Shown: positions 17,340 to 62,311, counted from the first letter of the stretch. The stretch: DNA of 64,000 nt from Heptranchias perlo (GCF_035084215.1 NC_090340.1:15314001-15378000), one strand, 5' to 3'. Notes: generated from the sequence alone by a model not told the origin. A program made the numbers and translations.

Positions 17340-17394
17340 ATGTCGACGAGTATGATGTTTCTGTGCTTGACGCTCCAGGGGATTTTTTACACAG
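17340..17394 (+). CDS. IgSF receptor copy 1, exon 1 (signal peptide MSTSMMFLCLTLQGIFYT)
   Basis: ATG at 17340, 55 nt, phase-1 donor ACAG|GTACCT; same length and donor as the copy 3 leader. Confidence 0.85.
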
Positions 17395-17563
17395 GTACCT
17401 CTTTATTCACAAGAACAGCTAATTTAATTACTAAACTGATTCCGAAGTAGTTTCCACATGAATGAAATGAACGTAATTCCTCTATCTAGATTCAATTTTC
17501 TCTTTTCCATCTCCATGTTGTATCTAATACAATTAACCCGGACTTGACTATATTTTCTGACAG

Positions 17564-17884
17564 CTGCGGACCACACTTCGTTCAGAGTGACTCAAGCGCC
17601 CGAACAGGCGACTGTATCCAGAGGGGGAAACATCACCTTCCACTGCATATTCCCCATCTCTCAAACCCATTCCTGGGCAAGAGTATATTGGTGGAAACAG
17701 GGTGAGAATAAATACCTGCACAGAAGCGCCGATAAGAGAAAACGATTTGGTCTGGAAGGTAAAGGGAGCGGTTTCTTTCAGTTGCTGAGCGCGACTTTCC
17801 AAGACTCTGGAGTCTATCACTGCGCAGTGATCCGAGAGGGAACAGTTGGAGGAAATGGAACCGGATCATATCTCATTGTGCATG
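17564..17884 (+). CDS. IgSF receptor copy 1, exon 2 (VJ-type V domain)
   Basis: Acceptor TTTTCTGACAG, donor G|GTAAGT, 321 nt phase 1/1; ITFHC, VYWWKQ, DSGVYHC, J-like GNGTGSYLIV. Confidence 0.93.
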
Positions 17885-18937
17885 GTAAGTGTGAAACACC
17901 GGAGAGCGGGACTGTTGTAAACATATCAAACATAACAAAAGGGAATGTTTTGTGATTGTTTTGTTGTACAGTTTTTGACAGTATAAACATTTCTGTGAAC
18001 ACATTTCGCGAGAAAGTTAAGTTGCATTTTCGTGTTCTCGATATAGAGCTTTCAATTAGAGAGTATAATATAACGCTCCACACCCAGGGTACTGCAAAAT
18101 GTATCAATATTAAGCAATTGGACTGTAACTCCAAATAAATTTATACACCAGATGCCTGATAGCGGAAGTTCGGATAAATTCCAAGCTGAGTGAAAATTGT
18201 TTATATTAATGCGCTTCCCCCACCATATACACGGCTCTTCGCCCATTTGGATGCTCTGTCTGCGCCGATGGCAGTCTCTGAGGTTTAACATTCTTGAAAT
18301 TAATTCTCACACGATGATTGGCTCGTTAGCGTCACGGATTTGAAAGCCAGCGTGCAACTGTTGATCAACGGATTCACTCAACAAATTGGAGCTTGGAATT
18401 CACAACTTTGTCGCCTCACTAACCCCCAATAAATAAAATAATACGCAGGAACTGTGTTGCTGAAACCTCCTGAGGTTCAACCGAATATAGTTTATTTCAC
18501 CAATTGTCATGCTTCGGCTGTGAGATCTGTCCGATACCGACTAATGCCCTCCTTTTATCATCGGCAATGTGTAGATTACTCGATTACTCGTCACCCTGTA
18601 ACTGAGTAAAAAAAAACAATGGCGAGACAAGGCGCGCCAACTTTCCCCCAGGGTTTATTTGCTTAATTATTTGGACTGTGAAACGCGACATTGATTACCG
18701 ATTGTTGCGACGTGTCTGCTGCATTATCGAGTCCAAAATTCAACGTTTTGGACTCGATAGCGCGTGTAAAATTGAACAGATGTCGGTGACGATGAATGAT
18801 ATGGTTGAGGTGTGTGTAGATGATGTGCCGAAAATTAAAAGGACAGGAGGCTGTGCTGTGGAAGGTAAATAAAAATCATATTTAATTTCTGCCAGTGGTG
18901 CCCAGTAACTCGATTTTGTTCATTGTCTGTTCCGCAG

Positions 18938-19243
18938 CTGCCCCAACTGCACTGAAGATTGCCTCGAGGACAGCTAAAGGGAATTCATCTGCGCCTCTGA
19001 CTCTTGTGTGTGAAACGGCTGAGTTTTATCCGGAGAATTTCACCCTCACTTGGTATAAAAATGCGGTCGAAACTACAACAGGAATACACACCATTAAACG
19101 GCAGAACACTGAGGGGCTGTATGAAGTTTCCAGCAGTTTGGAAGAGACGCAGCCTGTCCCGAGCGGCACGAATTATACCTGTTTGGTATCTCATGTCTCC
19201 CTTGAGACTCCAGCTGTTATCACCTATACTAAATTTAACCCAG
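18938..19243 (+). CDS. IgSF receptor copy 1, exon 3 (C1-set domain)
   Basis: 306 nt phase 1/1; LVCETAEFYP, LTWYKNA, GLYEVSSSL, YTCLVSH are C1-set motifs. Confidence 0.93.
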
Positions 19244-19384
19244 GTACGAGGCCAATGGTCCAGCTACTCTTAAATTCGCAAAGAGCTATATCGTAGAATT
19301 TGTACATATTAATATGGTTCACAGAAAACTCATGGGAGATATTATCGGAACCACCCGCCATAATGTACAACATTATTCTTGCAG

Positions 19385-19503
19385 ATCCTGTCGGTATGTC
19401 CCCTTACTACTCGGGTTTTAGATATGCGCTGGGTGGTTTGGCGTTTCTAGTGCTCCTGGTCATCATCGGGACGCATTGCCAATTGCAGGTAAAAAAAAGG
19501 TAA
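19385..19503 (+). CDS. IgSF receptor copy 1, exon 4 (stalk, TM with Arg, short tail)
   Basis: Acceptor TTCTTGCAG; DPVGMSPYYSGFRYALGGLAFLVLLVIIGTHCQLQVKKR*; donors at 19488 and 19499, in-frame TAA 19501-19503. Confidence 0.88.
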
Positions 19504-19987
19504 GATCTACTGTAAGCGTTTGATTTTTATACAAAACTTCAGGGAGCGGTGGAGAGGGAAAGTGAGAGCCTCCGAATAACACAAAGGAGAACTCGATTAT
19601 GACTTAAACTTGAAGGCAGTGTTATCTGATTTCAGGGAACGCCGGTTGTTCCAGACAGTAATAGATTCTGCACTTTAAAACGCAGAAATCCTCAAAAATC
19701 AGATTAAAAATAGACGTGATTACCTGTGTATTTGCAACAAAAGTTTCCACTTTGCAGCGTGATAAATGAAATGTACCGTGACACACGATCACTTTCCAAA
19801 CCAGTGGGCTGTGGGTCCGCAATTCGTTTGAGCGAAGCGGTGTGAGGCTCCGGCTGGTAAATCACTGCTGATCTCTACAGGGGCTCGGATTCAAACATTG
19901 TCCGTAAGAATATCTTTGAAACCATTGATATGGAAACTCGGTAAATATTTCAATCATTCATTATGATTACATTTCATTAATTCACAG

Positions 19988-20016
19988 GTGAAAAAGATGT
20001 AACGGGATCAAAGCCG
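19988..20016 (+). pseudogene. Copy 1 former cytoplasmic mini-exon, now out of frame
   Basis: TTCACAG|GT...CCG|GTATGT; flanks align with the copy 2 exon 42206-42249; open only in phase 1 (GEKDVTGSKP), which neither exon 4 donor supplies. Confidence 0.7.
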
Positions 20017-20204
20017 GTATGTTCACTCATTCATTCCCACAAAGAGTTCAATTATGCAGAAAGATTGATATCATGGAGACATTTTATCATAATCATGTCA
20101 GAACAGTTTGCCTATTTCCTAGAAGTATTTGTTCCGCTTAATGGGTCATTCAAATCGTGTTCAGTAAAATATTTGACGCTGGCAGGGAAGGAGTTCACCC
20201 TCAA

Positions 20205-20688: not shown

Positions 20689-21092
20689 GAGGCAAAGGCT
20701 GATATCGTTGATACGCTGCAGCAAGTTTGACCAGAACCAAAGAAACTCCAAGACGTAAGCTTGCAGAGAAAAGGACTGTGTATAATCAGTCGGGGCGGGA
20801 AGCGGATCAGACAGATACAGATCATCAGTGTAGCACCAAAATTCATGCGATAACGGAGAATATTAGGCTGGCTGACTCTGGTGGTTTATTGTATCTAAAG
20901 CTGTTCGTGTGTTATTCTGATGATTGTTTTCGGCAGCAGTCGTCAAATTGGCAAAACGACCAATTAACAAAATTTCCAAACATGGGTTTACAGACCAAAC
21001 AAGGCACCTTCGCGACTCTAGAATTGTCAGTCCAAAAAACGGGGAAATCCAAAAAAAAACAGAGAAACACGTTCCAGTATTATATCATTTAA
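20689..21092 (+). pseudogene. Copy 1 decayed cytoplasmic ITIM exons A (20689-20789) and B (20994-21092), probably now 3' UTR
   Basis: Align with copy 2 exons 42773-42874 and 46416-46588; 1-nt deletion, lost donor, motifs changed to YAAA, YNQ(S/T), TFATL. Confidence 0.78.
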
Positions 21093-21152
21093 TGTGGGTG
21101 CAATTGTTTGTTTCTGCTTAAATATTTGAGGAATTTTAATTTATTTACTTGT

Positions 21153-21158: not shown

Positions 21159-21610
21159 AATGCACTTACGTTACACATTTTTTGAACATTCTGCAGTTTT
21201 TAATAGATGACAAATCTCTGCAACGCTACACTAATTGTTTTGCTGTACCCAGTTATTATCGTGCATAATTTCAATAAAAAGATGTTCTGCGATTTCTCTC
21301 TTTTCACCATTAGTGATACTTTTTCTTCGCGAGTAACACCCCAGAACTTGGGTTTTGATTTATGTGTTGCCTTACTGCATTCAGGAATCCAGTCCAGGCG
21401 ATTCTCCTGATGTGGAAGGCAGGACGCTCCAGTCTATGGACTGGTCCATAAACCCACTGAACCCAGTTTGCAGTTGATGGAGCATGAGTATGCCTTTCTC
21501 TAAACTCTGTATGAATATTCATTCCTATCCGAAACGATGCTCCCAGACAATTCCAAGTGGCTTCCAAAGGAAAGGCCCCGATTATTCTCATTAAGATCTA
21601 TCTTCAAGAG

Positions 21611-22389
21611 TAAAGAATCTTACAACACCAGGTTATAGTCCAACAAATTTATTTGAAAATCACAAGCTTTCGGAGGCTTTCTCCTTCGTCAGGTGAATGT
21701 GGAAATGAAATCATTGAACGTTTCGCATTTATATTCAGAGAACAATACCTGGTGATTACAGATAATCTTTCCAACTGCCCGTTGTCAAGGCAATCAAAGG
21801 GTTCAGACAGAGAGGTGTTACGTACAGGACCACCGAATTTACAAACGGCCAGAACACAAAACAGAGAGAGAGAGGGAGAAACATTCTAAAGGAACAGAAA
21901 GACAGAAAATGACCCGTTGTATTAAAAACAGATAACTTTTATTCGCTGGTGGGTTTACGTGTAGCGTGACATGAACCCAAGATCCCAGTTGAGGCCGTCC
22001 TCATGGGTGCGGAACTTGGCTATCAATTTCTGCTCGACGATTTTGTGTTGTCGTGTGTCTCGAAGGCTGCCTTGGAGAACGCTTACCCGAAGATCGATGG
22101 CTGAATGTCCTTGACTGCTGAAGTGTTCCCCGACTGGGAGGGAACCCTCCTGTCTGGCGGTTGTTGTGCGGTGTCCGTTCATCCGTTGTCGCAGTGTCTG
22201 CATGGTCTCGCCAATGTACCATGCTCCGGGGCATCTGTTCCTGCAACGTATGAGGACACGTTCACCTGACGAAGGAGAAAGCCTCCGAAAGCTTGTGATT
22301 TTCTAAAAAATATTTGTTGGACTATAACCTGGTGTTGTAAGATTCTTTACATTTGCCAACCCCAGTCCATCATCGGCATCTCCACATCA
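21611..22389 (-). mobile_element. Penelope-like element, truncated, with inverted terminal repeat and 12-bp TSD
   Basis: Minus ORF 21955-22203 is a GIY-YIG C-terminus (ETMQTLRQRMNGH...EQKLIAKFRT..GLN); about 90-bp inverted repeat 21611-21700 / 22256-22349; TSD TATCTTCAAGAG at 21599-21610 and 22390-22401; empty site in copy 2 near 47340. Confidence 0.9.
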
Positions 22390-22879
22390 TATCTTCAAGA
22401 GGACAGAGATTCGAGAGGGTTCTGAGACAAGCAAACAAGAATGAATCCGGGACATGGCAGTTAAGTTGTGAGAAAAGCCCCACCGAGCTGAATGCATTTT
22501 ATTGAAGAAAATACCAAATTAAAAGGGATTCAGGTCTTTGAAATGTAGAAAGACGTGGATAAGATAGATATAAGCAGGTTGCATGGTTTAACGCGCAACC
22601 AGAAGCTCGGAATTAAAAAGCACTAAGGAGGTCCCGTGGCTCCCTGGTCAGCTGAGGGAAAGTTGTAGTTTGAATGTTTAAACTGTCAGCTATTTAGGAA
22701 GTAGATCACTTCAATTACAGGGTGAAGACTAGATGGTTACTGGAAGAACAGCAGCCCAGCACTTCCAGAGACTAAGCCTTTAACTCAGAATTTAAAGATA
22801 ATACAAGACAAAATGAATGAGTTACATTGTATTTAGCCTAACTCTCCTGGTTTGATGACAGTGTCCATCATCACATGTT

Positions 22880-36400: not shown

Positions 36401-37110
36401 ATTAAATAAATTTAAAACAGAAATCGACAGTTTCCTAGAAGTGAAGGGAATTAGGGGTTACTGGGAGCGGGCAGGAAATTGGACATGAATTTAGATTTGA
36501 GGTTAGGATCAGATCAGCCATGATCTTATTGAATGGCGGAGCAGGCTCGAGGGGCCGATTGGCCTACTCCTGCTCCTATTTCTTATGTTTTTATGTTCTT
36601 ATGTGATGGAATACTCTCCACTTGCCTGGATGACTGCAGCTCCAACAACACTCAAGAAGCTCGATACCATCCAGGACAAAGCAGCCCGCTTGATTGGCAC
36701 CCCATACACCACCCTAAACATTCACTCCCTTCACCACCGGCGCATTGTGGCTGCAGTGTGTACCATCCACAGGATGCACTGCAGCAACTCGCCAAGGCTT
36801 TTTCGACAGCACCTCCCAAACCTGCGACCTCTACCATCTAGATGGACAAGAGCAGCAGGTACATGGGAACAACACCACCTGCACGTTCCCCTCCAAGTCA
36901 CACATCATCCCGACTTGGAAATATATCACCGTTCCTTCATCGTCGCTGGGTCAAAATCCTGGAACTCCCTTCCTAACAGCACTGTGGGAGAACCTTCACC
37001 ACACGAACTGCAGCGGTTCAAGAAGGCCACCTTCTCAAGGGCAAGTAGGAATGGGCAATAAATACCGCCCTCGCCAGCGACGCCCACATCCCATGAACGA
37101 ATGAAAAAAA
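33475..37110 (+). mobile_element. Family B APE-RT LINE, 5'-truncated second copy
   Basis: ORFs 33436-33624, 33679-34755, 36585-37061 closely match 9410-11617; A-rich end at 37104-37110. Confidence 0.92.
34714..36603 (+). mobile_element. Young 5'-truncated CR1 nested in family B LINE; uninterrupted 588-codon RT reading frame (34722-36488)
   Basis: Splits host GGAGTGTG|ATGGAATAC; FADD intact; (TTCTTATG)n tail; nearly identical to the minus copy at 37-1900. Confidence 0.95.
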
Positions 37111-39410: not shown

Positions 39411-41856
39411 TTATTTGTTCACTTTTATTAGAGCAACTACCTAAGTAAACTTATTATTCTGTAATGGCATGCGCCCACGAGCACTGCACTGCCTCAGTTT
39501 TGCACCTCGCTGGTCCTCAGCCTGTACTTCAGCGTAACTCTTATGCCCATACTTCTCTGGTTTCTAGATGGTCATTAGATTTGCTATTTAACTATGAATA
39601 ATTATATAAACTAAAAGTTTATGTAAATAAGGACAGAATTTATGATTTCAACATGGAGATTGAATTAATTCTGCGTGACCTGGGTCAATTATTTCTCAAC
39701 CCTCAACCGCTCCTTCATGGAAACACAATCCTTGGTCTTGGCTCCCTGCCACGACCTGAAGTGCCGAGAATTGTTCCTGACTCCACTCTCAGCGCGTCCG
39801 GACCCAAACGATCTGGTTGCACTTCAGTCTTTCTTCATTCGTCCAGTTCATTTCCTCTGTTGCTATTTTTTGATTCTTCTACTGCGCTGGCCGAATCTGG
39901 CTGTGTTGGTGTGGGTCGTACTGTAAAGAATTCGACTCTGCAAAGTTTGAATTCTTCATTTGGGTTCGACCACAAATGAATGGACTTTAGGCGTTGGGAA
40001 CAGGCTGCAAATGCTTCGTCGTGGAATGGCCAGGGTGCAGAAGTGACCTCCCCACTTATTCCAGCAGTCTACTCACTCGGTCCATATATTTTCACGAAAA
40101 TCGTTTCAGAGAAGTTTGAAGTGTTTATATTTTATTTTGTTTTTGTTATACAAAAAGGACCCTTATTTTCATTGTCCAAAGATGGCCTCTCTGGGGGTTT
40201 TCATTCCCGGCGCTACAATCCAATCTCGAACTCACAATTCCTCTAATTCCCACCTCTTATGCGCCCCCTCCCTTTGTCCTACCATTGCTGGTCATTCTTT
40301 CGGCCGTCGAGGCCCCATCTACCACAGTTTCCTCCCTAACATCGTTTCCTTTAAGAGACTCCTTAAATCACACCTCTTTGACCAAGCTTTCGGCCGCACC
40401 AGGTAGTGTCTCCTTCTTTGGTTCGACGTCATTTTTTCCTTCCGCTCTTGCGAAGCCCCTTGAGACGTTTTCTTCTATCATAAAGGAGCTATAAAAATAC
40501 AGATTCTTGGAGGTTTCTGGTTTTGATTGGCAGCATTCGCTACTCTGCATATTGAGCAAATCCATCAGGTAAACTTAAGGGAGAGTGATTATTTGAATCA
40601 ATCAGAAAAGTATTAGGTGCTAATTTTTGGATTAATGCACTTACATACATTTTTAAAATGCAGTGTCAATGGACACGAGAAATATGAGAGCCCTTTAAGA
40701 GGCCCTTAAAATAACGGCGAAGCCTCCATTGCACTTCACGCTCGAATGAGGGGAATATTTCCCTCAGCCGTTCCCATGCTCGGGCAGTGTGTGCTGCCCG
40801 ACATCCATCTGGTCCCTCCTTTTATTCTGGGTAATGCACAGATTTTTCGTTTCTCTCTTGGGGAGACAATCAAACAGAGCCAGAGTTATTAATAAATAGG
40901 GAAAGACTGATAATGGCATCCATCTCTCAAATCCAACGTCTAATATCTCCCCAGTAACCTGATTTTCCCCATTGTCTGTTCGACAGCTGCCCCAACTCCA
41001 CTGAAGATTGTTTCCAGAACACCCGAGCCAAATCGTCTGCCTCTCTGACTCTTGTGTGTGAAACGGCTGAGATTTACCCGGAGGATTTCATCCTCACTTG
41101 GTATAAAAATGGCGTCAAAACCACAGCTGGGATAAATATTACTAAACGACAAAACACTGGGGGTCTGAATGAAGTTTCCAGTCCTTTGGAAGAGACGCAG
41201 CTTAACCGAAATGGCTCTGTTTACATCTGTTTGGTAACTCATGTCACCCTCCAGACACACACCATTGTAACCTACACTGTAAGCAATTCCAACCCAGGTA
41301 AGAGGTCAACAGGCCAAGAACTGAGGTCAGCTACTGTTAAATACTGAAAAGGTATTTCATAGAGTTTGTTCATATTGATAATCGTAAGATAATTTGAATA
41401 AAATTCCCGGGAAAGCAAACTGAAAATTCATGTTTCAATGTAATGTATTATTGACCTGAACCTGTTGTAAAACCGGAAGTAATATTATCGCTCTCCACCC
41501 AGAAACTGCCAGTGAAACCTCGACAGCTTCTCAAAATGCCATGGCGGTGTTTGAATCACCTTCTCTGGATTGTAAGTCCACGCCTCTGGATTAAAAGTTC
41601 AGTAACATAAGCACTACCCTACCGTACCCTTATATTGCTAGATATTTAACTGTGGGGGCTAAACTAGGGAACACTGGTAAAAAGTAGTAAATGATAATTT
41701 TAAGAATGATGTCAGGAATTTCTTCTTCACAAAGATCAACATGTGGAATAAACTTGCAGACTCAGCAAAGGAGGCAAAAGACCGAGAATCCTTTAACAAA
41801 TAGCTGGATTCTACATCGGGGAAACATTTTCATCAGGGTGGATGAATTAAATTCTA
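37760..41856 (+). repeat. Segmental duplication, paralogous to 55209-64000 (copy 2 versus copy 3 unit)
   Basis: Colinear similarity across a shared CR1-CR1 junction (TTCCATCCAAA.CTCTCTGAAC), unique DNA 39410-40200 / 56890-58060, an L2 tail 40200-40510 / 58060-58345, the C1 exon and intron. Confidence 0.92.
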
Positions 41857-44800
41857 CTGTTTTGCCTATGTAGTTCAATGTCGTATTGGCTTTGTCCACT
41901 GCTGCTCTGCTTGGATGGACATGTGGTTAGCGTCCAGTCTACTAAGACTCCTAAGTCTCTTTTAGTTCCATCCTTAGCTATTTCAATGCAATCCATGGAA
42001 TACATGTATAGTTTAATTTTCCTTCCCATCCGTAGTAATCTACTCTTCTCTGCATTGAATTTCATCTGCTATTGCTCTGCCCACCTATATATCTAAATTC
42101 ATGTTAAGCTTTACATTGATTCTAAAAATACTTTTGAAAGCATAAACATGGAAATTGAATAAACATTTTAATCATTGAGTGTGATCAAATATCATTAATT
42201 CCCAGGTAAACAGAATAGGGTAAGAACACCGCACCGCAATGAAGAGCTGGTAGGTTCATATCATTCATCCAGGAAGAGAGTTCGAATTTAAATAAATATT
42301 GTTATGATGGAGATATTTTATCAAAAGTAATTGTCCCTCTTTGATGAGTCATTCAAATCGTGTTTTGAAAATTAATTGGCACTTGTTGCAATGCTGGTGT
42401 AACTGGTTAAACAAAGATTTTTTAAAAATAAAATTGGTAGCTTTATTCAACATTTACCTAGGTAATAATTATTTGTAAATCCATCTAATCCTTGCTTTTG
42501 GAATCTGACATTACACGTCTAAGATTCTGAAACTACCTCTTGTTTAATCATATCTGTAACACTGTATAGTGGTGAAAATTGATAGGTTGAAATGTCAGTT
42601 ACAGTGGACACACTATTTACCGGCCTTAATATTCGCATAATTCTAAAATATATTAACTGTGGTTTTATTTGTAGTCCCGATCATTCTGTGCAATATTTCA
42701 TCAGCAGTCTGTAAACGGGCGAAGGCACTGAACTAGCCACATAACAAGACAATTTCCTTCTGGCCCGTGCAGGGAGCAGAGAGTGAGATGGCGCCTTATG
42801 CTGCATTAGATGTGAGCAAAGCCAAGAAAACCCCAGGACGTAAACTTGAAAAGGAGAGGGCAGTATACGCTCAGGTACGGCAGAGAAGCAGATAAGGGAA
42901 ACATAAATCACCACTGTGGCACTAACATTCATGGAATAGCGGAGTATTTTGGGTTATAGAAGTGGCTGATCCTTTATCTGAATACCATATTCCCGCTCTC
43001 TCCCCATACCCCTTTTGTGTCTAGAAATCTATCTGGCTCCTTCTTAAATATATTCAGTGACTTGGCCTCCATTGCCTTCTGTGGTAGAGAATTCCACAGG
43101 TTCACCAAATTCTGAGTGAAGAAATTTGTCCTTATCTCAATCCTAAATGTCCTACCGCATATCCTGAGACTGTGAGCCCTTGATCTGGACAGCCCAGCCA
43201 GGGGAAACATCCTCCCTGTATCCAGTCTTTCTAGCCCTGTCAGAATTTTATATGTTCAATGAGATACCCTCTCATTCTTCTAAAATCGAGTGAATATAGG
43301 CCGAGTCAACCCAATCTCTCCTCATATGACAGTTCTGCCATCCCAGGAATCAGTCTGGTGAACCTTCTATGGAAAGTATATCCTTTCTTAGTTAAGGAGA
43401 TGAAAACTGCATACAATACTCCAGGTGTGGTCTCACCAAGACCCTGTATAACTTCAGTAAACATCGTTGCTCCTGTACTCAAATCCTCTTGCAATGAAGG
43501 CCAACATAACAGTTGCCTTCCTAGTTACTTGCTGCACCTGCACGTTTGCTTTCAGTGACTGGTGTTCAAGGATACTCAGGAACATCAACATTTCACAATC
43601 TACCCCATTTAATAAATCGCTGCCTTTCTGTTTTACCTTCCGAAGTGGATAACTTCACATTTATCCATATTATACTGCATCTACCATGTATTTGCCCACT
43701 CACTCAACTTGCCTAAATCGCCTTGAAGCCTCTTTGCATCACCCTCACAACTCACGATCCCACCTAGTTTTATGTCATCAGCAAACTTAGAAACATTACA
43801 TTTCGTTCCCTCATCCAAATCATTGCTATATATTGTAAATAGCTGGGGCCCAAGGACCGATCCCTACCGTACCCCACTAGTCGCTTCCTGCCACCCCGAA
43901 AAAAAAACATTTATTCCTACTCTCTGTTTCCTGTCTGTTAACCAATTTTCAATCCATGCCAGTATATTACCCCCAATCCCATGTGCTTTAATTTTGCATA
44001 CTAACCTCTTATGTGGAATTTATCAAAGGCCTTCTGAAAATCCAAATAAACCACATTCACTGGTTCTCCCTTATCTATTCTACCAGTTACATCCTCAAAA
44101 AACTCCAGTAGGTTTGTCAAACACGATTTCCTTTTCATAAATCCATGTTGACTTTGTCCAATCCCGTTGATATTTTCTAAGTGTCCTGTTATCACATCCT
44201 TTATAATAGACTCGAGCATTTTCTCTACTATTGATGTTAGGCCAGCTATAGTTCCCTGTTTTCTATCTCCCTCATTTTTGAAATAATGGGGTTACATTTG
44301 CCACCCTCCAATCTGCAGGAACTGTTCCATAATCTACAGAATTTTGGAAGATGACAACCAATGCATCCATTATTTCCAAAGCTACCTCTTTTAGTATTCT
44401 GGGATGCAGATTATCAGGCCCTGGGAATTTATCGGCTTTCAGTCCCATTAATTTCTCCAACAGTATTTTTTTACTAATACTACAACCCTTTAGTTCCCCC
44501 TTCTCACTAGTCCCTTGGTTCCCTAGCATCTCTGGGAAGTTATTTGTGTCCTCTTCCGTGGAGACAGAACCAAAGTATTCGTTTAATTGCTCTGCCATTT
44601 CCTTGTTCCCCATTATAAATTCTCCCGTTTCTGACTGTAAGAGACCTACATTTGTCTTCACTAATCTTTTTCTTTTTACATACTTGTAGAAGCTTTTACA
44701 GTCCACTTTTATGTTCCTTGCAAGTTGACTCTCATACTCTATTTTCCCCCTTTTAATCAATCTCTTGGTCCTTTTTTGCTGAATTCTAAACTGCTCCCAA

Positions 44801-46588
44801 TCCTCAGCCTTGTTACTTTTTCTGGCAACTTTAAGTGACTTCTCTTTGGATCTAATACTATCCTTAATTTCTTTTGTTAGCCATGGTTGGGCCGCTTTTC
44901 CTATTGTGTTTTTGCGTCAGAAAGGAAAGTATATTTGTTGCAATTCATGCATTCGTTCCTTAAATGTTAGCCATTGCCTCCCCACCAGCATGCCTTTTAA
45001 TGAAGCTTCCCAGTCTATCATAGCCAACTCACTGCTCATACCTTCGTAGTTTCCTTTGTTTAGATTTATGACCCTAGTTTCGGATTGACCTACTTCACTT
45101 TGCATCTTAATGCCGAATTCTATCGTGTTATGTTCACTCTTCTCTAAAGGTCCCCGCACAACAAGATTATTAATTAATCCCTTCTCATTGCACAATACCC
45201 AACCTAGGATAGCCTGTTCCCTGGTTGGCTCCTCAACATACTCTGAAAAACCATCTCGCACACTCCAGGAATTCATCCTCCACATTATTATTGCTAATTT
45301 AGTTTGGCCAGTCTACATGTAGATTAAAGTCACCCATGATTACTATAGTACTCTTGTTACATGCATCTCTAATTTCCTGTTTGATGCCGTTTTCTACATT
45401 ACCACTACTGTTTGGAGGCCTATAGACAACTCCCACCGGTGTTTTCTGCCCCTTTGTGCTTCTTAACTTCACCCAGACTGATTCTACATCTTGATTTTCT
45501 GAGCCAATATCCTTTCTCACTATTGCTCTGATTTCATCCTTTACTAACGCCAGACCACCTACTTTACCTTTTTGCCTGTCCTTCCTAAATATCGAATACC
45601 CTTGGATATTCAGCTCCCAGCCTTTGTCACCCTGCAGCCATGTCTCTGTAATTGCAAATATATCGTATGGGTTTACATTTATTTGTGATGTTAATTCATC
45701 TACATTATTGTGAATGCTTCGTGCATTCAGATGCAGTGCCTTTAGATTTGTCTTTTTAACATTTTTAGACATCTTAAAAAAATTTTGTGCTATGGCCCTA
45801 TTTGTCTTAATACCATTTTTTCTTACCCGGACCCTATTTGTTAGTGCACTCTTTTGTTTGTACGCTCTGCCCTTCCTGACACAATCTGATTAACCTTACC
45901 CCAATCACTTTCCTGCACTGCTTCTTTGTCTTTTCTCTTTAGCATTCTAGATTTCTCTCCACCGGGACTCTTCCCCCCACCCCACCCCCACTTATTTAGT
46001 TTAAAGCCCTATGTACCTCACTAGTTATTCGATTTGCTTGAACTCTGGTCCCAGCATGGTTCAGGTGTAGACCGTCCCAACGGAACAGCTCTCTCTTTCC
46101 CCAGTACTGGTGCCAGTGCCCCACGAATCGAAACCCACTTCTTCCACACCAATATTTGAGCCACGCATTCATCTCTCTGATCTTAGTTACCCTATGCCAA
46201 TTTGCTCGTGGCTCAGGTAATACTCCAGAGATTAATACCTTTGCGCTTCTGCTTTTTAATTTAGTCCCGAGCTGCTCAAACTCTCAGTTGTGCTGACTTT
46301 AACCGTATTTTGTATCTAAAGCTATTTGTGAGTTATTCGGATGACTATTTTGAGCAGCATTCCACAAACTGGCAAAAAGACCAATCAACAATACTTCCAA
46401 ACATTGGCTTTTCGGGTAAAACAAGGAAGAGCCCGTGACAAACTGACGTACGCGATCTAGAATTGTCTGGCCCCGAGAAAGCGGGGAAATCTAAAAATAA
46501 CCGAAAAAGTACAGAATTAGGCGAACTACAGACGAAAAAACAAAGAGGAGTAACAGAGGTCGTTTACACAGAAGCAAGAACCAAATAG
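40987..46588 (+). pseudogene. IgSF receptor copy 2 pseudogene: frameshifted C1 (40987-41297), cytoplasmic exons 42206-42249, 42773-42874 (read-through stop 42895), 46416-46588; no leader, V or TM
   Basis: C1 is 311 nt versus 312 in copy 3 (GAG CC AAA versus GAG AGC AAA); exon A reads GAESEMAPYAALDVSKAKKTPGRKLEKERAVYAQ; exon B has a CGG acceptor and a 1-nt deletion. Confidence 0.88.
42958..46286 (-). mobile_element. CR1, near-complete disrupted ORF2, in the last intron of copy 2
   Basis: ORFs 45299-45772 (APE), 44917-45285, 44272-44760, 44001-44219, 42974-43210; flanks rejoin to match the 204-bp copy 1 intron 20790-20993. Confidence 0.92.
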
Positions 46589-55200: not shown

Positions 55201-56890
55201 CATACACGCCAAGATCCCTTTGTTCCTCTACACCTCTCAGGACCCTTCCATTTATTGTGTACTCCCTTGCCTTGCTTGCCCTCCCCAAATCCATTACCTC
55301 ACATGTCTCTGGATTGAATTCCATCCAAAACTCTCTGAACACCAACACTTAATAGTTTCTCACCATTTAATAAATAATTTGTTTTTCTTCTGTTCCTACT
55401 AAAGTGAATAACTTCACATTTCCCCACATTATACTCCATCTGCCACCTTCTTGCTGACTTTTACCTGTCTAAATCCCTTTGACGACTGTTTGTGTCCTCC
55501 TCACAGCTTACTTTCCCACCTAGCTTTGTATGTTCAGCAAACTTAGATGAATTACACTCGGTCCCGTCATCTAAGTCATTAATATAGATTGTAACTAGCT
55601 GAGGCTCACGCACTGATCCTTGCAGCACCCCACTAGTCACAGCCTGCCAACCTGAAAATGACCCGTTTTTCCCTACTCTCTTTTTTCTGTTCATTAAGCA
55701 ATCCACTTTCACTATCTGTGCTAATATATTACCCCCAACCCCATGAGCCTTTATTTTATGTAACAACCTTCTGTGTAGCACTTTATCAATTGCTTTTTGA
55801 AAATCCAAATATAACATATCCACTGGTTCCCTTTTATCTACTCTGCTAGTTACATCCTCAAAAAACTTCAGTAGATTTGTCAAACACGATTTCCCTTTCA
55901 TAAAATCATGTTGACTCTGTCGAATCATATTATGATTTTCTAAGTGCCCTCTTACTAAGTCCTTAATAATGGATTCCACCATTTTCCCGACAACTGATGC
56001 ATGTTTTCTCTCTCCCTTTTTAAATAGCGCTTTTACGTTTGCAACATTCCAATCCATTGGGACCATTCTAGAATTTAGGGAATTTTGGAAGATCACAACC
56101 AATATATCCACTATCTCTGCAGCCACGTCTTTTAGAACTCTAGGATGTAGCCCATCAGGCCCAGGAGATTTGTCAGCTTTTAGTCCCATTAATTTCTCCA
56201 GTACCTTTTCTTTACTAATATTAATTACGTTAAAGTCCTCACTCTCATTAGACCCTTGGTTCCCCACTATTTCTGGTTTGTTTTTCATGTCTTTTACTGT
56301 GAAGACAGATACAAAATATTTGGTTAACGTCTCTGCCATTTCCTTATTCCCCATTATAATTTCTCCTGACTCTGCCTCTAAGGGACCCACATTTACTTTC
56401 ACTAATCTTTTCCTTTTTACATACTTGTAGAAGCTCTTACAATCTGTTTTTATATTTCTTGTGAGTTAACTCTCGTTTTCTATTTTCTGCCTCTTTATCA
56501 ATTTTTGGTCATCCTTTGCAGGTTTCTAAAACTTTCCTAATCCTCAGGCCTACTTCCATTGTTGACAACGTTATAAGCCTCTTCTTTTAATCTAATGCTA
56601 TCTTTAACGTCTTTAGTTAGCCACGGATGGATCATTTATCCCGTGAAGTTTTTATTCCTCAATGAGATATATATTCATTGAAAATTATGAATTTTCACCA
56701 TTACTTATCGACCGTCATAATCTAATCTAATTTCCCAATCAACCTTAGCCAACTCTCCTCTCATACCTATGTTATTGGCTTTGTTTAAGTTCAAGACACT
56801 AGTTTTGAACTTAAGTACGTAACTCTCGAACTGTGAAATTCTATCATATAATGATCACTCTGCCCCATAGGATGCCTTACTAGGAGATTA
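55201..56890 (-). mobile_element. CR1 RT fragments, paralogous to 37760-39410
   Basis: ORFs 55163-55348 and 55461-56402. Confidence 0.88.
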
Positions 56891-57836: not shown

Positions 57837-59345
57837 ACAGGCTGCAAATATCTCGGTGTGGAATGGCCAGTTTGGAAAAGTGACCTCCCCACTTATTCCA
57901 GCGGTCCACTCACTCGGTCCATGTATTTTCATGAAAATCTTTTCAGAAAAGTTTGAAGTGTTTATATTTTATCTTCTTTTTGATTTTTATACAAAAAGGA
58001 CACTTATTCTCATTGTCCATAACTGGCCTCTCTGGGGGTTTTCATTCCCAGCGCTACAATCCCCTCTCGAACCACAATTTCTCTAATTCCCACCTCTTAT
58101 GCGCCACCTCCCTTTGTCCTACCATTGCTGGTCATTCTTTCGGCCGTCTAAGCCCCATGTTCCACTATTTCCTCCCTAAAATCGTCTCATTTAAGAGACT
58201 CCTTAAAATCCATCTCTTTTACCAAGCTTTCGGCCGAAACTGGTAGTGTCTCTTTAGTTCGACGTCCATTTTTTTCCTTCCACTTTTGCGTAGCCCCTTG
58301 GGGTGTTTTCTTCTATCATGAAGGAGCTTTAAAAATACAGATTCTTGGGGGTTTCTGATTTTGATTGGCATCATTCGCTACTCTGTATGCTTGAGCAAAT
58401 CCATCAGGTAAACTTAAGGGAGAGTGATTATTTGAATCAATCAGAAAAGTGTTAGGTAATAATTTTGGGAGTAATGCACTTACCTACATTTTTAAAATGC
58501 AGTGTCCATGGACACGAGCAATATGAGAATATTTAGGATGCCCTTCAAATAACGGTGAAGCCTCCGTTGCACTTGACGCTCGTTTGAGGACAATATTATC
58601 GTTCACTATTAATATATTTTGGTCATTGAGCTCTTGACCTGGACGCTCATTAGGCGCACGGTTCTTGTTTATCTAACTAACTTATCCGCTATCAAACCAA
58701 CTTGCGCAGTTTAATCATTGCCGCCATTATTTTGCTCCAAACATTTTTGGCAGGATGCGCTGTTAACTGGAAATTGCATTTGCAAACATGCCCTGATCTC
58801 GGCAGCTGTCTGATGGGATCATCAAATCTCTATTTCCGAACTGTTAAATAAGGTGATTATAATGTAAAAATGGACCCTCGGTCTTTCTCATAAACTATTG
58901 CCACTTTATTTAAGAACTGATTAGAAATGATCTATAAAATTTCCCAGTCTGTACATATTTGACATTTTTACAATATTGTGTGACGAGTGCAACCTAAATG
59001 AGGTGTAATTATCGCACGAGATTCACCACAAGGAGCTTGCACATTCGACATCTTAATCTGGGGCAATCCAATACGGTGCAGCAGCTGTTCGAAAATATAT
59101 TTGCTGTTGGTAAATTCTCCATTTGAAATTCGGATATTATGTTTTCCTAATCCTGCGTTAACCGTGACAAAGGTGATTGCAGTGGCTGCTTCGGAGCAAA
59201 ACGGTCAGCAAATCTCACTTTACAAACGAAACCTATTTTCTGAATCTGCAGACACAGGATGTCAAACGTCATTGCGAGGCATTTCAGCTTAAGTAAGTAA
59301 TCAGTAGTGGAAACAGTCAGTGATCAGTTTAATCTTTTGCTCGGA

Positions 59346-59400
59346 ATGTTGTGGAGTGTGATATTTCTGTTCCTGTCTCTCCGGGGAATTAGATTCACAG
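59346..59400 (+). CDS. IgSF receptor copy 3, exon 1 (signal peptide MLWSVIFLFLSLRGIRFT)
   Basis: 55 nt, donor ACAG|GTACCT, homologous to the copy 1 leader. Confidence 0.85.
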
Positions 59401-59593
59401 GTACCTGTTATTCTCTATCCCAGCTGTCTCAATAAAAACACATCTGAAGGAGTTACCACTTGAATTGAATGAGATTTATTTCGTCCATCTATATTCTTTT
59501 TCCTCTAACTTATTTCCATGTACAAATATTTTCCAAAGTGTCTGGTTCCACATAGAATATAAATAACCAAATGTTTCATATATTTTCGAACAG

Positions 59594-59902
59594 CTGCTGC
59601 ACGTATTTCACAAACACCCGAAAAGATGATTGCATTAAGGGGGACAGACATCACCTTCTACTGTATAATCCCCCTCTCTCATGAAAACTCATGGGTAGAA
59701 GTGCGTTGGTGGAAACAGGGTGAGAACGAATATCTGCAAATAGGCGACGATAACAGAAAACGATTTGGTGTCAAAAATAAAGGAGCTGGTTTCTTTGAGC
59801 TGCGGAACGTGACTTTCCAGGATTCTGGAATCTATCACTGCACAGTGACCCGTCAGGGAAGAGTTAGTGAAAATGGAACGGGCTCAAATCTAATTGTGTG
59901 CG
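59594..59902 (+). CDS. IgSF receptor copy 3, exon 2 (VJ-type V domain)
   Basis: 309 nt phase 1/1; ITFYC, VRWWKQ, DSGIYHC, ENGTGSNLIVC; donor G|GTAAGT. Confidence 0.93.
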
Positions 59903-60736
59903 GTAAGTGACTGGGATGAGCGGGAACGTCCAAATGTATCAGATGTAACAAGAGGTCATTTTGTGATTGTTTTATTGTACATTTTTTGACAGTATGAAAC
60001 ATTTATTTTAATACATTTACAGTCAAACTCAATGTTACTCCGATGTCTCTGTACACAGCTGCCAAATACGCGGCATAAAATGGCGCTTCATTTGCTGAGT
60101 TTTGTGAAATTCCATCAATATTAACCAGATTAAGTAACATGTTACTGGATTCATCTCAAAATGTCGTTTCTACATCAGACTTCTGAGGAGGGAAGGTGCG
60201 GAACAAATTCCAAATATATTGATGACTGACTGAAAATACTTTATATTATTGCGCCATTTATACGGCTCTTACCTTATTTTAGAAGCTTTGTTTGTCCCTG
60301 TCACTGTCGGAGAGGTTTAACGGTCTCTCCTGAAATTAATGCTCACAAAATGACAGGCTGGTTCGATTGGCTGATTTCAAATCAGATGTAATTAACTCAA
60401 CAAACGGCACCATGAACCAAAATATCGCCGCCTCTTTCGTCTCCAATAAATAAAATATTCCCCAGACACTGTGCGGCTGATGCTTTCTGAGATTGAATGG
60501 AATGTAATTTCCTTCAGCCATTCCCATGCTCGGGCAGTGTGAGCTCTCCGATAATCATTTGGTCCCTCCTTTTATTCTCGGAAATGTACAGATTTTTCGT
60601 TTCTCTCTTGGGGAGACAGTCAAACAGAGCCAGAGTTACTAACAAACAGGGAATGACTGAGAATGGCATTCATCTCTCATCTCTCATCTCTCAATATCTC
60701 CCAGTAACCTGATTTTCCCATTTCTCTGTTCGACAG

Positions 60737-61048
60737 TTGCCCCAACTCCACTGAAGATTGTCTCCAGGACACCCGAGAGCAAATCGTCTGCCTCTCTGAC
60801 TCTTGTGTGTGAAACGGCTGAGTTTTACCCGGAGGATTTCACCCTCACTTGGTATAAAAATGGCGTCAAAACCACAACTGGGATAAATATCACTAAACGG
60901 CAAAACGCTGGGGGTCTGTATGAAGTTTCCAGTTCTTTGGAAGAGAAGCAGCTTAAGCGGAATGGATCTGTTTACATCTGTTTGGTAACTCATGTCAGCC
61001 TACCGACACCCGCCATTGTAACCTACACTGTAAGCAATTCCAACCCAG
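60737..61048 (+). CDS. IgSF receptor copy 3, exon 3 (C1-set domain)
   Basis: 312 nt phase 1/1, open; LVCETAEFYP, WYKNG, YICLVTH; donor CAG|GTAAGA. Confidence 0.93.
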
Positions 61049-62200
61049 GTAAGAGGCCAACAGGCCAAGAACTGAGGTCAGCTACTGTTAAATACTGAAA
61101 AGGTATTTCATAGAGTTTGTTCATATTGATAATCGTAAGACAATTTGAATAAAATTCCCGGGAAAGGAAACAGAAAATTCCTGTTTCAATATAATATATT
61201 ATTGACCTGAACCTGTTGTAAAACCGGAAGTAATATTATCGCTCTCCACCCAGAAACTGCAAGTTAAACCTCGACTGCTTCCAAATTGTTAAAAAAAATG
61301 AGCAGGGATTTTATCTTTTCTATCCAATTATTTTATGTCTCTTGCTTATTACTAAACATTCTAATTTGTCCTCTTGTTAAAGTGTTTTTATTCTATCGCA
61401 TTATATTCTTTCCTTACATGAGCTGCAGGACCAGGAGCTGCAGTTCGGTGTCTGCCATCGAGCCTCTTCTGGTGCGGCTCCTGATTCCGAGCGCTGTTGG
61501 GCGATTCATTGTGAATGGGTCAGAAATCGACCTTGTGGATAGGCCGTAATCTGACCCCTCCAGGATACAGAAGTTTGGAGCGGGATCCCATTTCATACCT
61601 TTCATTCAGGCCCTGCCCCAGATCTGTCTGTACTACAACCGGGTGCAAAGCATCGTTTTATTAACAACCATTTTTCTGTAATTAACAAATAATCGTGTGC
61701 TGGTTTCCTTTCCTATTCAGTGACAGTCTTATTTCGGTAAATACGCTGCAGATAATTGAATTGACGTTTAAACCAATTGATACAATCAGCCTTTTTTCTC
61801 AAACAATGGCGAGTCACATGTCGCTGACTGGCCCTGATTTCATCAAACAAGCGCTTAAGAGCAGAAGAAAAGTCAATTCGAAGAGCAAGCCATTCGGTCC
61901 ATCGAAACTTATTCTTCTAGAATTCCAACTTTCCCAAACCAATCTTCAGAACACCCTAAACTGGTTCCCTCCGTCGCAGATTATTCCGGTCATGTGTCAC
62001 CCTTTTTGACAAGAAGCTCCTTTTGATATCAGTTCTAAAAAGATAAATTAAGATTATTTTCAAATTCCGACGTACTCGTGCTATAATGCGGAGTTACTGT
62101 AAATATGAACAGTAGTTCAACCAACCAAAGTTATCCCGACGTCTCCATTTAGGTAACGTCCGCCACAAATTAGAACTCTATGTTGCTTTTCATCTTGCAG

Positions 62201-62311
62201 ATCGTGACGGTAAATATCGTTACCTTTGGGGTGTTGGATGTGCGGTGGGTGAATTGGCGTTTCTCGTGCTCATAATCATCATTGGGACAAGATGCAATTT
62301 GACGAATAAAC
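62201..62311 (+). CDS. IgSF receptor copy 3, exon 4 (stalk, TM with Glu); gene continues beyond the window
   Basis: Acceptor CATCTTGCAG, donor C|GTAAGT, 111 nt phase 1/1; DRDGKYRYLWGVGCAVGELAFLVLIIIIGTRCNLTNK; aligns without gaps to the copy 1 TM. Confidence 0.88.

What the first reader, a model, noticed from the sequence alone, without database searches (positions are those of the whole stretch)
17340..62311. Tandem cluster of non-rearranging VJ-C1-TM receptors that looks like a paired activating/inhibitory family
Seen: three same-strand paralogs with phase-1 leader, V and C1 exons, a TM exon and tyrosine-motif tail exons. Known: one V with a J-like G strand plus one C1 domain is the layout of TCR and Ig light chains; C1 domains are otherwise limited to few families (MHC, beta2m, tapasin, SIRP, some B7/butyrophilin members); SIRPs are V-C1-C1 or V-only, NKp30 is V-only, teleost NITRs are V plus I. 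Inference: a lineage-expanded innate receptor family with antigen-receptor-like architecture and no RSS, evolving by birth and death, relevant to models of the pre-RAG VJ-C1 ancestor. I cannot tell whether it is already described; automated annotation would probably call it SIRP-like or NCR3-like.
Basis: partly seen in the sequence, partly recalled or inferred. Interest (0 to 1): 0.9.

Follow-up and report, generated by a model that had tools for sequence, protein, structure and literature searches.

The report
Shark SIRP-like VJ-C1 receptor gene cluster
This stretch of shark DNA holds two intact genes and one broken copy of a large, shark-and-ray-wide family of non-rearranging immune receptors. 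Their outer part is laid out like a T-cell-receptor chain, and their inner part either carries inhibitory tyrosine motifs or is cut short. The family is annotated only by automatic names, and I found no paper describing it.

Summary
The window holds two complete same-strand genes, copy 1 at 17340-19503 and copy 3 at 59346-62311. Each has a 55-nt phase-1 leader, one V exon that already contains a J-like G strand, one C1-set exon and a TM exon. The middle copy is a pseudogene. A 1.9-kb deletion removed its leader and V exon, its C1 exon has a 1-nt deletion, no TM exon was found, and its tail is broken. There are no RSS-like sites anywhere in the window.

The genes belong to a large family limited to cartilaginous fish: about 80 clusters at 50% identity in sharks, rays and a chimaera. 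Automatic names include 'SIRP-alpha/beta-like', 'tapasin-related-like', 'NCR3LG1-like' and 'Ig lambda-like'. Family members carry either long tails with several ITIM/ITSM motifs or short tails with charged TM residues, so the paired inhibitory/activating reading holds for the family.

Within the window:
- Copy 1 is a short-tailed form with a conserved Arg at the TM edge and decayed ITIM exons downstream.
- Copy 2 keeps relics of an ITIM tail.
- Copy 3's tail lies beyond the window.

No domain is specifically closest to SIRP, NKp30, UrIg or TCR/Ig. RNA support is thin: one spliced leader-V contig, 96.5% identical to copy 1. First readers of this scan noted the same kind of gene at ten or more other places in this genome. 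Interest is moderate to high. I class it as a new variant of a known kind.

The parts
17340..17394 (+). Copy 1 leader exon. It is 55 nt, begins with ATG and ends in phase 1 with donor GTACC.
   Evidence: Sequence and frame check. An RNA-run contig joins 17394 to 17564 with GT..AG ends.
17564..17884 (+). Copy 1 V exon. It is 321 nt, phase 1-1, and contains Cys, Trp, YHC and a J-like GNGTGSYLIVH strand in the same exon.
   Evidence: Pfam V-set 2e-9. Family HMM 1e-49. AlphaFold model pLDDT 91.
18938..19243 (+). Copy 1 C1-set exon, 306 nt, phase 1-1.
   Evidence: Pfam C1-set 4e-13. PDB hits to UrIg2, Ig CH, TAPBPR, MHC II beta and SIRP-alpha.
19385..19503 (+). Copy 1 stalk, TM and short-tail exon (GMSPYYSGFRYALGGLAFLVLLVIIGTHCQLQVKKR, stop TAA at 19501-19503). 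An A8 run puts the homologous GTAAG donor in phase 2 instead of phase 1.
   Evidence: Catshark P0001 has the same TM and ends after a 5-residue tail.
20712..20804 (+). Copy 1 relic of the first ITIM tail exon (YAAASL...TVYNQS). The motif residues are lost and there are stops just upstream.
   Evidence: tblastn with family tails, three-frame translation showing the upstream stops and translation of the relic.
20991..21071 (+). Copy 1 relic of the second tail exon (GTFATLEL, NTFQYY). The tyrosines are replaced.
40757..40759 (+). Copy 2 deletion junction. The equivalent of copy 3 positions 58598-60506, which holds the leader and V exons, is missing here.
   Evidence: blastn: 57837-58597 matches 40000-40759 (88%), then 60507-61288 matches 40757-41538 (92%).
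40987..41297 (+). Copy 2 C1 exon. Its splice sites are kept, but a 1-nt deletion at 41027/41028 shifts the frame.
   Evidence: DNA alignment, translation, Pfam C1-set 9e-9 on the part after the shift.
42776..42883 (+). Copy 2 tail exon relic. It is still open and reads APYAAL...AVYAQV.
   Evidence: tblastn with P0034 (6e-5) and P0010 (8e-4); translation.
46401..46585 (+). Copy 2 last tail exon relic. A frameshift falls inside LTYA|LELS, and TEYAEL has become TELGEL. It ends YTEARTK, as Heptranchias P0172 does.
42977..46290 (-). LINE insertion in the intron between the two copy 2 tail relics.
   Evidence: Reverse-transcriptase ORFs on the minus strand. Copy 1 homology is interrupted here.
59346..59400 (+). 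Copy 3 leader exon, 55 nt, phase 1.
59594..59902 (+). Copy 3 V exon, 309 nt, with J-like GTGSNLIVC. It has a Cys at the V-C1 junction.
   Evidence: Pfam V-set 1.4e-8. Family HMM 4.5e-46.
60737..61048 (+). Copy 3 C1-set exon, 312 nt.
   Evidence: Pfam C1-set 1.5e-13. Family HMM 1.7e-48.
62201..62311 (+). Copy 3 stalk and TM exon (DRDGKYRYLWGVGCAVGELAFLVLIIIIGTRCNLTNK). It has a strong GTAAGT donor in phase 1 and a Glu inside the TM.

Best explanation
The window holds part of a tandem array of a multigene family found across cartilaginous fish. The genes encode germline-joined (non-rearranging) type I membrane receptors made of a signal peptide, a compact VJ-type V domain, one C1-set domain, a stalk, a TM segment and a tail.

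By inference, these work as paired innate immune receptors of the SIRP / NITR / KIR kind:
- The V domain binds a ligand that is still unknown. Its BC and FG loops are the most variable parts.
- Long-tailed members recruit SHP-type phosphatases through repeated ITIM/ITSM motifs ([LV]xYAxL, TEYAx[ILV]).
- Short-tailed members with a charged residue in or at the edge of the TM would signal through an ITAM adaptor.

In this window:
- Copy 1 is a short-tailed member with a conserved Arg (GFRY). It descends from an inhibitory gene, because dead ITIM exons still lie downstream of it.
- Copy 2 is a dead duplicate of a copy-3-like gene.
- Copy 3 is intact as far as its TM exon. Its tail is not in the window.

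What is shown: the gene structures, the domain types, the absence of RSS, the family's distribution, the tail motifs in relatives, and the pseudogene lesions. What is inferred: the ligand binding, the phosphatase and adaptor recruitment, and the cell type that expresses the genes.
For: - Exon models and phases.
- Pfam V-set and C1-set above the cut-offs.
- The family HMM finds 2 V, 3 C1 and 2 TM exons.
- No RSS.
- HMMER against 1.84 billion representative proteins with V1: 81 proteins at E<=1e-10, mostly V(20-125)-C1(127-225)-TM(230-260)-tail.
- All 20 family members I looked up are from Chondrichthyes: Scyliorhinus, Mustelus, Heterodontus, Heptranchias, Hemiscyllium, Chiloscyllium, Hypanus, Hemitrygon, Amblyraja, Mobula and Callorhinchus.
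- Tails with 2-5 ITIM/ITSM motifs occur in many members. Short tails with R, K or D/E in the TM occur in others.
- Heptranchias P0172 is 80% identical to copy 1 in C1 and has a nearly identical start of V, but carries the tail LHYTAL/IVYAQI/LTYATL/TEYAQL.
- Catshark P0001 has copy 1's GMSxYYSGFRY TM and a 5-residue tail.
- Copy 2 lesions.
- C1 tree: copy 2 and copy 3 are sisters (97), and copy 1 groups with Heptranchias P0172 (92).
- A spliced leader-V contig in an RNA-type run uses exactly the predicted junction.
Against: - No functional data exist.
- The only transcript evidence is one low-depth contig at 96.5% identity, which could be an allele, a paralog or a related species. The runs are only guessed to be RNA.
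- The Arg of copy 1 sits at the outer edge of the TM, not in its middle.
- Copy 3 has a Glu in its TM, which no relative I saw shares. This could mean the gene is decaying.
- Copy 3's tail is unseen.
- The homodimer prediction gave no verdict.
- Chondrichthyan restriction rests on 20 looked-up family members and on searches that favour close relatives.
Confidence: 0.75

Rival explanations
1. These are true SIRP genes: the cartilaginous-fish orthologs of the tetrapod SIRP-alpha/beta cluster that lost (or never gained) the second C1 domain. They would bind a CD47-like self marker.
For: - NCBI names many relatives 'PTPNS1-like' or 'SIRP beta-1-like'.
- The family profile aligns in one stretch to SIRP-alpha V plus d2 (2wng, E 1.4e-32) and to SIRP-gamma.
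- SIRPs are V-C1-C1 with a J-like G strand (PMC2785349).
- The alternating xTYAxLxx / TEYAxI tail pattern resembles the SIRP-alpha tail. That comparison rests on my memory of the human sequence.
Against: - SIRP is not the best match for either domain taken alone. V1's top 60 PDB hits are antibody, VNAR, TCR and PD-L1 chains.
- For C1, the best matches with a single stretch are TAPBPR and MHC II beta. SIRP-alpha's 39.6 bits is summed over two stretches.
- These genes have one C1, not two.
- The V is compact (103-107 residues, short C'-C'' region), unlike SIRP d1.
- ITIM plus ITSM tails of this form are common to many SHP-recruiting receptors (my knowledge).
- Synteny could not be tested.
Confidence: 0.12
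2. The family is part of the NCR3 (NKp30) / B7H6 system already described in sharks, either as C1-bearing NCR3-family receptors or as B7H6-like V-C1 ligands.
For: - Some relatives are named 'NCR3 ligand 1-like'.
- NKp30 is among the structural neighbours of the V model (Z 13.3; TM 0.75-0.76).
- NKp30 is a non-rearranging VJ domain with a multigene family in sharks (cited in PMC12227049; Kinlein 2021 could not be read).
- RefSeq isoforms that skip the C1 exon give NKp30-like V-TM proteins.
Against: - NKp30's structural score is tied with NCAM, VNAR, CD79b, TCR V and antibody V, at only 21% identity.
- B7-family V domains lack a J-like strand (my knowledge), whereas GNGTGSxLxV is nearly invariant here.
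- PMC12227049 treats NCR3 as a V-only outgroup and mentions no V-C1-TM family.
- First-reader notes place the MHC class I windows of this genome on other assembly pieces (untested).
Confidence: 0.08
3. The family is a direct surviving relative of the pre-RAG antigen-receptor precursor. It would be sister to TCR/IgL chains or to UrIg/UrIg2, not just another innate IgSF family.
For: - It has exactly the VJ + one C1 + TM layout of a TCR chain.
- UrIg2 is the top non-antibody hit for C1 and for the whole profile.
- It is present in all chondrichthyan lineages sampled, including a chimaera.
- The nearest V domains outside Chondrichthyes include teleost TCR-alpha V and Ig kappa-like V.
Against: - The UrIg2 score is summed over three C domains, and the best single domain scores only 27 bits.
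- Similarity to Ig/TCR is at the general V/C1 level, 20-30% identity.
- There is no linkage evidence to the MHC or to the antigen-receptor complex.
- No homodimer support was obtained (no verdict).
- The tails mark it as a typical paired innate receptor.
Confidence: 0.05

Closest known systems
SIRP family (SIRP-alpha / SIRP-beta paired receptors)
   Same: A non-rearranging V with a J-like G strand, followed by C1-set domain(s). Both have paired forms with near-identical ectodomains: a multi-tyrosine ITIM tail versus a short tail with a basic TM residue. The family profile aligns across SIRP-alpha V-d2, and automatic annotation uses this name.
   Different: One C1 instead of two. A compact V of 103-107 residues without a real C'-C'' segment. 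No specific sequence closeness in either domain. Far larger copy number. Ligand and synteny are unknown.
UrIg / UrIg2 (non-rearranging shark antigen-receptor-like genes; PMC12227049, PDB 9dmx)
   Same: A single-exon VJ domain with a split leader followed by C1-type domains, in cartilaginous fish. UrIg2 is the top non-antibody PDB match.
   Different: UrIg has three C domains and is secreted. UrIg2 has nine or more C domains. Both are treated in PMC12227049 as individual genes, linked to the MHC or to the antigen-receptor complex. Here there is one C1, a TM, ITIM or short tails, and dozens of copies.
PRARP genes of bony vertebrates (Fu et al. 2019, cited in PMC10751288; paper not held, details from memory)
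   Same: A non-rearranging VJ domain plus one C-type domain plus a TM, with inhibitory motifs. [quoted passage not shown]
   Different: As I recall, PRARPs are a linked gene pair reported in bony vertebrates, not a large family in cartilaginous fish. No sequence was available here for comparison.
Teleost NITRs
   Same: A large, rapidly evolving, clustered family of germline-joined V(J) receptors with ITIM-bearing and charged-TM members. A knifefish protein that I read as NITR-like from its sequence (named only 'uncharacterized' in the database) is among the distant V hits.
   Different: The second domain of NITRs is I-type, often with its own J motif, not C1. They are limited to ray-finned fish.
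NKp30 (NCR3)
   Same: A compact non-rearranging VJ-type domain and a structural neighbour of the V model. It forms a multigene family in sharks.
   Different: NKp30 has no C1 domain, and identity is only about 21%.

Membership tests
Rearranging antigen receptors (TCR / Ig light chain) | V and J are separate gene segments flanked by RSS (heptamer, 12/23 spacer, nonamer). | tested here: not met
   V and the J-like strand are in one exon that ends at a splice donor. There are 0 RSS-like sites in 64 kb.
Rearranging antigen receptors (TCR / Ig light chain) | One V domain followed by one C1-set domain (plus a TM in TCR chains). | tested here: met
   Pfam V-set and C1-set on consecutive exons, followed by a TM exon.
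SIRP family | V domain followed by two C1-set domains (alpha, beta1, gamma). | tested here: not met
   There is a single C1 exon between V and TM in copies 1 and 3, and in almost all relatives.
SIRP family | Paired members: ITIM tail versus short tail with a basic TM residue. | tested here: met
   Family tails and TMs. P0172 versus copy 1/P0001, and P0037 versus P0174. The signalling itself was not tested.
SIRP family | Orthology: groups with SIRPs in trees and lies in the SIRP chromosomal region. | not testable with these tools
Domain-level PDB ranks do not favour SIRP.
SIRP family | Binds CD47 (alpha, gamma). | not testable with these tools
   No ligand information is available.
UrIg / UrIg2 | A VJ domain followed by three or more C1-type domains; homodimer. 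| tested here: not met
   One C1 only. The dimer prediction gave no verdict.
NCR3 / NKp30 | A single VJ-type Ig domain joined directly to the stalk and TM; Arg in the TM. | tested here: not met
   A C1 exon is present. V-TM forms appear only as predicted C1-skipping isoforms of relatives. Copy 1 does have an Arg at the TM edge.
B7 family (B7H6 / NCR3LG1) | V-C ectodomain whose V domain lacks a J-like GxGxxLxV strand (from my knowledge of the family). | tested here: not met
   GNGTGSxLxV is nearly invariant across the family: G98, G100 and V105 are at 90% or more.
Teleost NITR | V domain plus an I-type second domain; ray-finned fish. | tested here: not met
   The second domain is C1-set. All 20 family members I looked up are chondrichthyan.
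ITIM-bearing inhibitory IgSF receptors (functional class) | A cytoplasmic [SIVL]xYxx[ILV] motif in an intact reading frame. | tested here: inconclusive
   Met in many relatives. In the window the motifs appear only as relics in copies 1 and 2. Copy 3's tail is outside the window.

The most novel reading that the evidence does not exclude
This chondrichthyan VJ + single C1 + TM family could be the closest living relative of the membrane-bound, non-rearranging receptor chain whose V exon was split by the RAG transposon. In layout it would be a better model of the pre-RAG TCR/IgL ancestor than UrIg/UrIg2. NKp30-like V-only receptors might have arisen from such genes by loss or skipping of the C1 exon.
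Probability: 0.08. Interest if true: 0.9.

Novelty: new variant of a known kind. Interest (0 to 1): 0.58.

Why it matters
Single-exon VJ genes joined to C1 domains are actively sought as relics of the receptor that the RAG transposon invaded. UrIg (2023) and UrIg2 (2025) were reported as individual genes of this kind in sharks.

This family has the exact one-V, one-C1, TM layout of a TCR chain. It is germline-joined, present from chimaera to rays and sharks, and expanded to dozens of copies with inhibitory and putatively activating members. In public annotation it is hidden under five different automatic names.

Recognising it as one family would:
- give comparative immunologists a shark counterpart of SIRP, NITR and KIR-type paired receptors;
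- add a new outgroup for V and C1 phylogenies of antigen receptors;
- provide clear cases of inhibitory-to-short-tail conversion to study.

If the family has already been described under another name, this window is simply a well-resolved example of it.

Tried and rejected
- Homodimer prediction on the ectodomain of chimaera member P0007 (residues 24-232, two copies): no verdict, score 0.00. This is not evidence either way.
- The search for homologous proteins with the V ORF gave 2 hits. With full-length P0007 it gave 11 hits, all chondrichthyan. The word index and the length filter make these blanks uninformative about distant kin.
- RNA runs: only four runs of one sample, kept as contigs and only guessed to be RNA. 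One spliced contig was found. No information was obtained on the C1-TM junction, the tails or copy 3.
- Papers: Kinlein 2021 (shark NCR3 family), Flajnik 2012 (B7H6/NKp30), Ohta 2019 and the UrIg 2023 paper are not held. Fu 2019 (PRARP) did not turn up in the searches. Seven successful full-text searches found no description of this family.
- Lizard P0108 looked like a possible tetrapod V-C1 relative. It turned out to be a receptor with three V-like domains and an ITIM tail.
- Foldseek and VIA searches with the V model gave tied hits to NCAM, VNAR, CD79b, NKp30, TCR V and antibody V, so no family could be assigned.
- Rfam and tRNA scans of the window found nothing.
- A weak minus-strand C1-like tblastn hit at 34609-34761 lies inside a LINE ORF and was not recovered by the family HMM.

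Full report
**Source and setting.** The window is vertebrate DNA rich in LINE reverse-transcriptase ORFs, with no N runs. A first-reader note on another piece of this genome describes a V-D-D-J-Cmu mini-locus (untested), which fits a cartilaginous fish. The relatives found here are all chondrichthyan. The best match to the V exon is 68% (catshark, Mustelus). The best match to the C1 exon is 80% (Heptranchias). The species' own proteins do not seem to be in the protein collections.

**Checking the observation.** A family HMM run over every open frame of 25 residues or more finds exactly 2 V, 3 C1 and 2 TM exons and nothing else. I read the sequence and checked frame continuity in a script. That script translated the joined exons only to check the frame.

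- Copy 1: leader 17340-17394, V 17564-17884, C1 18938-19243, TM 19385-19503.
- Copy 3: leader 59346-59400, V 59594-59902, C1 60737-61048, TM 62201-62311.
- Every internal exon is a multiple of 3 nt long and in phase 1. All introns are GT..AG.
- Pfam calls the V exons V-set and the C1 exons C1-set, above the curated cut-offs.
- The V exon runs through GNGTGSYLIVH (copy 1) or NGTGSNLIVC (copy 3) straight into the donor site. This is a GxGxxLxV J-like strand, so V and J are germline-joined.
- A scan for heptamer, 12/23 spacer and nonamer found nothing in 64 kb.

**The middle copy is a pseudogene fragment.**
- Copy 2 and copy 3 share flanks in the same order. 55196-57468 matches 37749-39993 (84%, including a shared LINE). 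57837-58597 matches 40000-40759 (88%). 60507-61288 matches 40757-41538 (92%).
- The 1.9 kb between these blocks in copy 3 holds its leader and V exons and is absent from copy 2. Copy 1 has the equivalent segment (17308-18585 matches 59314-60602), so this is a deletion in copy 2.
- Copy 2's C1 exon (40987-41297) keeps both splice sites but has a 1-nt deletion at 41027/41028.
- No TM exon was detected.
- Two tail exons survive. One is still open (42776-42883, APYAAL...AVYAQV). The other (46401-46585) has a frameshift and a lost Tyr (TEYAEL has become TELGEL). A LINE sits between them.

So 'three paralogs with leader, V, C1, TM and tail' is only partly right.

**What the genes are.** A HMMER search with the copy 1 V exon against 1.84 billion representative proteins gave 172 hits at E<=0.001 and 81 at E<=1e-10.
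- Apart from a few giant multi-Ig proteins, the hits down to about rank 90 are proteins of 220-490 residues. They have the V at about 20-125, a C1 that is 40-80% identical to ours at about 127-225, a TM at about 230-260, and a variable tail.
- All 20 family members I looked up come from cartilaginous fish, including the chimaera Callorhinchus.
- They carry a mixture of automatic names: PTPNS1 (SIRP-alpha)-like, SIRP beta-1-like, tapasin-related protein-like, NCR3 ligand 1-like, Ig lambda-1 light chain-like, or uncharacterized.
- The next hits outside the family are heterogeneous: teleost TCR-alpha V, Ig kappa-like, a knifefish receptor I read as NITR-like, a lizard three-V ITIM receptor, and IGSF3-like. 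They share 27-33% identity.

The family is therefore a distinct chondrichthyan lineage. First readers of this scan noted the same kind of gene at 12.6, 12.5, 12.4, 10.5, 9.8, 9.4 and 0.43 Mb before this window, at 0.25 Mb beyond it, and on other pieces. I did not check those notes.

**Relation to known domains.**
- The copy 1 C1 exon alone matches UrIg2 (9dmx, 61 bits summed over three domains, best single domain 27 bits) and Ig heavy-chain C domains. It also matches TAPBPR (41 bits), MHC II beta (40 bits) and SIRP-alpha (40 bits over two stretches).
- The V exon alone matches antibody V, VNAR, TCR V and PD-L1 at E of about 1e-5.
- A 27-member family profile matches V-C1 proteins as a unit: Ig heavy chains, UrIg2 (2.6e-38), SIRP-alpha V-d2 (1.4e-32) and SIRP-gamma.
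- An AlphaFold model of the V exon (pLDDT 91) is a compact V/I-like sandwich with almost no C'-C'' segment.
- Its structural neighbours are tied at Z 12.4-14.2: NCAM Ig1, VNAR, basigin, CD79b, TCR V, antibody V, NKp30 and PD-1.

No known family stands out. The architecture is antigen-receptor-like, but the sequence similarity is only at the general V and C1 level.

**Signalling parts**.
- Many relatives have long tails with two to five motifs such as VSYATL, LTYAAL, TVYAQx and TEYAQL/TEYAEI. These fit ITIM and ITSM consensus patterns.
- Others end a few residues after the TM and have charged TM residues: an Arg near the outer edge, or an R...[DE]H pair.
- Ectodomains are shared between the two kinds. 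Heptranchias P0172 is 80% identical to copy 1 in C1 and nearly identical at the start of V, yet it carries the tail LHYTAL / IVYAQI / LTYATL / TEYAQL / ...YSEARTK.
- Catshark P0001 shares copy 1's stalk and TM (GMSxYYSGFRYxxGGLAFL) and stops after five residues.
- Copy 3's V and TM resemble catshark P0174 (short tail, Arg in the TM) and P0037 (ITIM tail).

The paired inhibitory/activating-like reading is therefore supported for the family.

**The window's own genes.**
- Copy 1 reads ...VIIGTHCQLQVKKR and then TAA. Relative to copy 3, an A8 run adds one base before the homologous GTAAG donor. Splicing there would be in phase 2 instead of phase 1.
- The downstream exons homologous to the ITIM tail are still recognisable, but the motifs are destroyed: YAAL has become YAAA, VYAQV has become VYNQS, LTYATL has become GTFATL, and there are stops upstream.
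- Copy 1 is thus a short-tailed derivative of an inhibitory gene, with an Arg conserved with catshark.
- Copy 3 is intact through a strong phase-1 donor at 62311. No tail exon was found in the remaining 1.7 kb, which is largely a foldback repeat.
- Copy 3's TM has a Glu (GVGCAVGELAFL) where relatives have Gly. I cannot tell whether this is functional or a defect.

**Evolution.**
- In a C1 tree of 69 rows, copies 2 and 3 are sisters (SH-aLRT 97) and copy 1 pairs with Heptranchias P0172 (92). All three lie in an 11-row clade (94) with catshark, Mustelus and ray sequences.
- That tree used the quick method on short columns, and many forks are open. I left out isoform duplicates P0151, P0153-P0156, P0158-P0161, P0165 and P0166.
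- Together with the pseudogene, the LINE insertions and the 84-92% identical duplicated flanks, this fits birth-and-death evolution with old subfamilies.
- Across 47 family V domains, the FG loop (2.9 bits) and the BC loop (2.6 bits) are the most variable. The C strand (WWKxGE) and the G strand are the most conserved.

**Expression.**
- Only four runs of one sample were offered. They are kept as contigs and are only guessed to be RNA.
- One 256-nt contig joins 17394 to 17564 with GT..AG ends, exactly the predicted leader-V splice. It differs from the window at 7 of 198 laid bases. A second contig covers 17730-17825, and another run has depth in the C1 exon.
- This shows that a very close allele or paralog is spliced as predicted. 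It does not show expression of these exact copies, the later junctions or the tails.

**Literature.**
- UrIg and UrIg2 are described as non-rearranging VJ plus multi-C genes. [quoted passage not shown]
- VJ-C1 genes in tetrapods and PRARP are mentioned in PMC10751288.
- SIRP-alpha is discussed as a V-C1-C1 link to antigen receptors in PMC2785349.
- I found no paper in the held library that describes this chondrichthyan V-C1-TM family. Several key papers were not held (see Tried and rejected), so prior description is not excluded.

**Verdict.** The cluster is real, though less complete than the finding describes. I read it as a window onto a large, unnamed chondrichthyan family of SIRP-like, antigen-receptor-shaped paired receptors. 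Its mechanism is inferred by analogy, and membership of SIRP, NCR3, UrIg or TCR/Ig is not established.

Noticed in passing
window 21500-22500: A very high-copy repeat with inverted arms at 21610-21701 and 22257-22350 (94.7% identical). Thousands of contigs from the RNA-type runs lie on it. It has no Rfam or tRNA match.
   Followed up: partly
window 62765-63131 and 63626-63992; also 41528-41856: A foldback pair of 367-nt arms (92% identical, inverted) just downstream of copy 3's TM exon. A third copy sits directly after copy 2's C1 exon, where the TM exon would be expected.
   Followed up: no
window 17190-17260 and 59200-59265: Copies 1 and 3 are otherwise about 67% identical, but they share conserved 5' flank blocks about 90-150 nt upstream of the ATG (ACAAACGAAAC and CTGCAG..ACAGGATGTCA[T/A]ACG). 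This is a candidate promoter with IRF-like and ETS-like cores, untested.
   Followed up: partly
window 62240-62262: Copy 3's TM segment has a Glu (GVGCAVGELAFLVL) where family members have Gly. The catshark counterpart P0174 has an Arg four residues earlier.
   Followed up: partly
window 59897-59902; relatives P0005, P0007, P0011, P0018: A Cys at the V-C1 junction (LxVC) recurs in copy 3 and in several shark and chimaera relatives. It could form an interchain disulfide.
   Followed up: no
relatives P0054/P0058 and P0046/P0069: Predicted RefSeq isoforms of the same genes lack the C1 domain. Skipping the phase 1-1 C1 exon gives NKp30-like V-TM proteins.
   Followed up: partly
relatives P0033, P0043, P0050, P0064, P0070: A short-tailed subfamily has a [DE]H pair at the inner end of the TM. 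Most of them (not P0050) also have an Arg near the outer end.
   Followed up: no
window 149-3107 (-), 8260-9864 (+), 33625-36485 (+), 44275-45889 (-), 55464-56465 (-): Long reverse-transcriptase/endonuclease ORFs of several LINE copies fill much of the space between the receptor genes.
   Followed up: no
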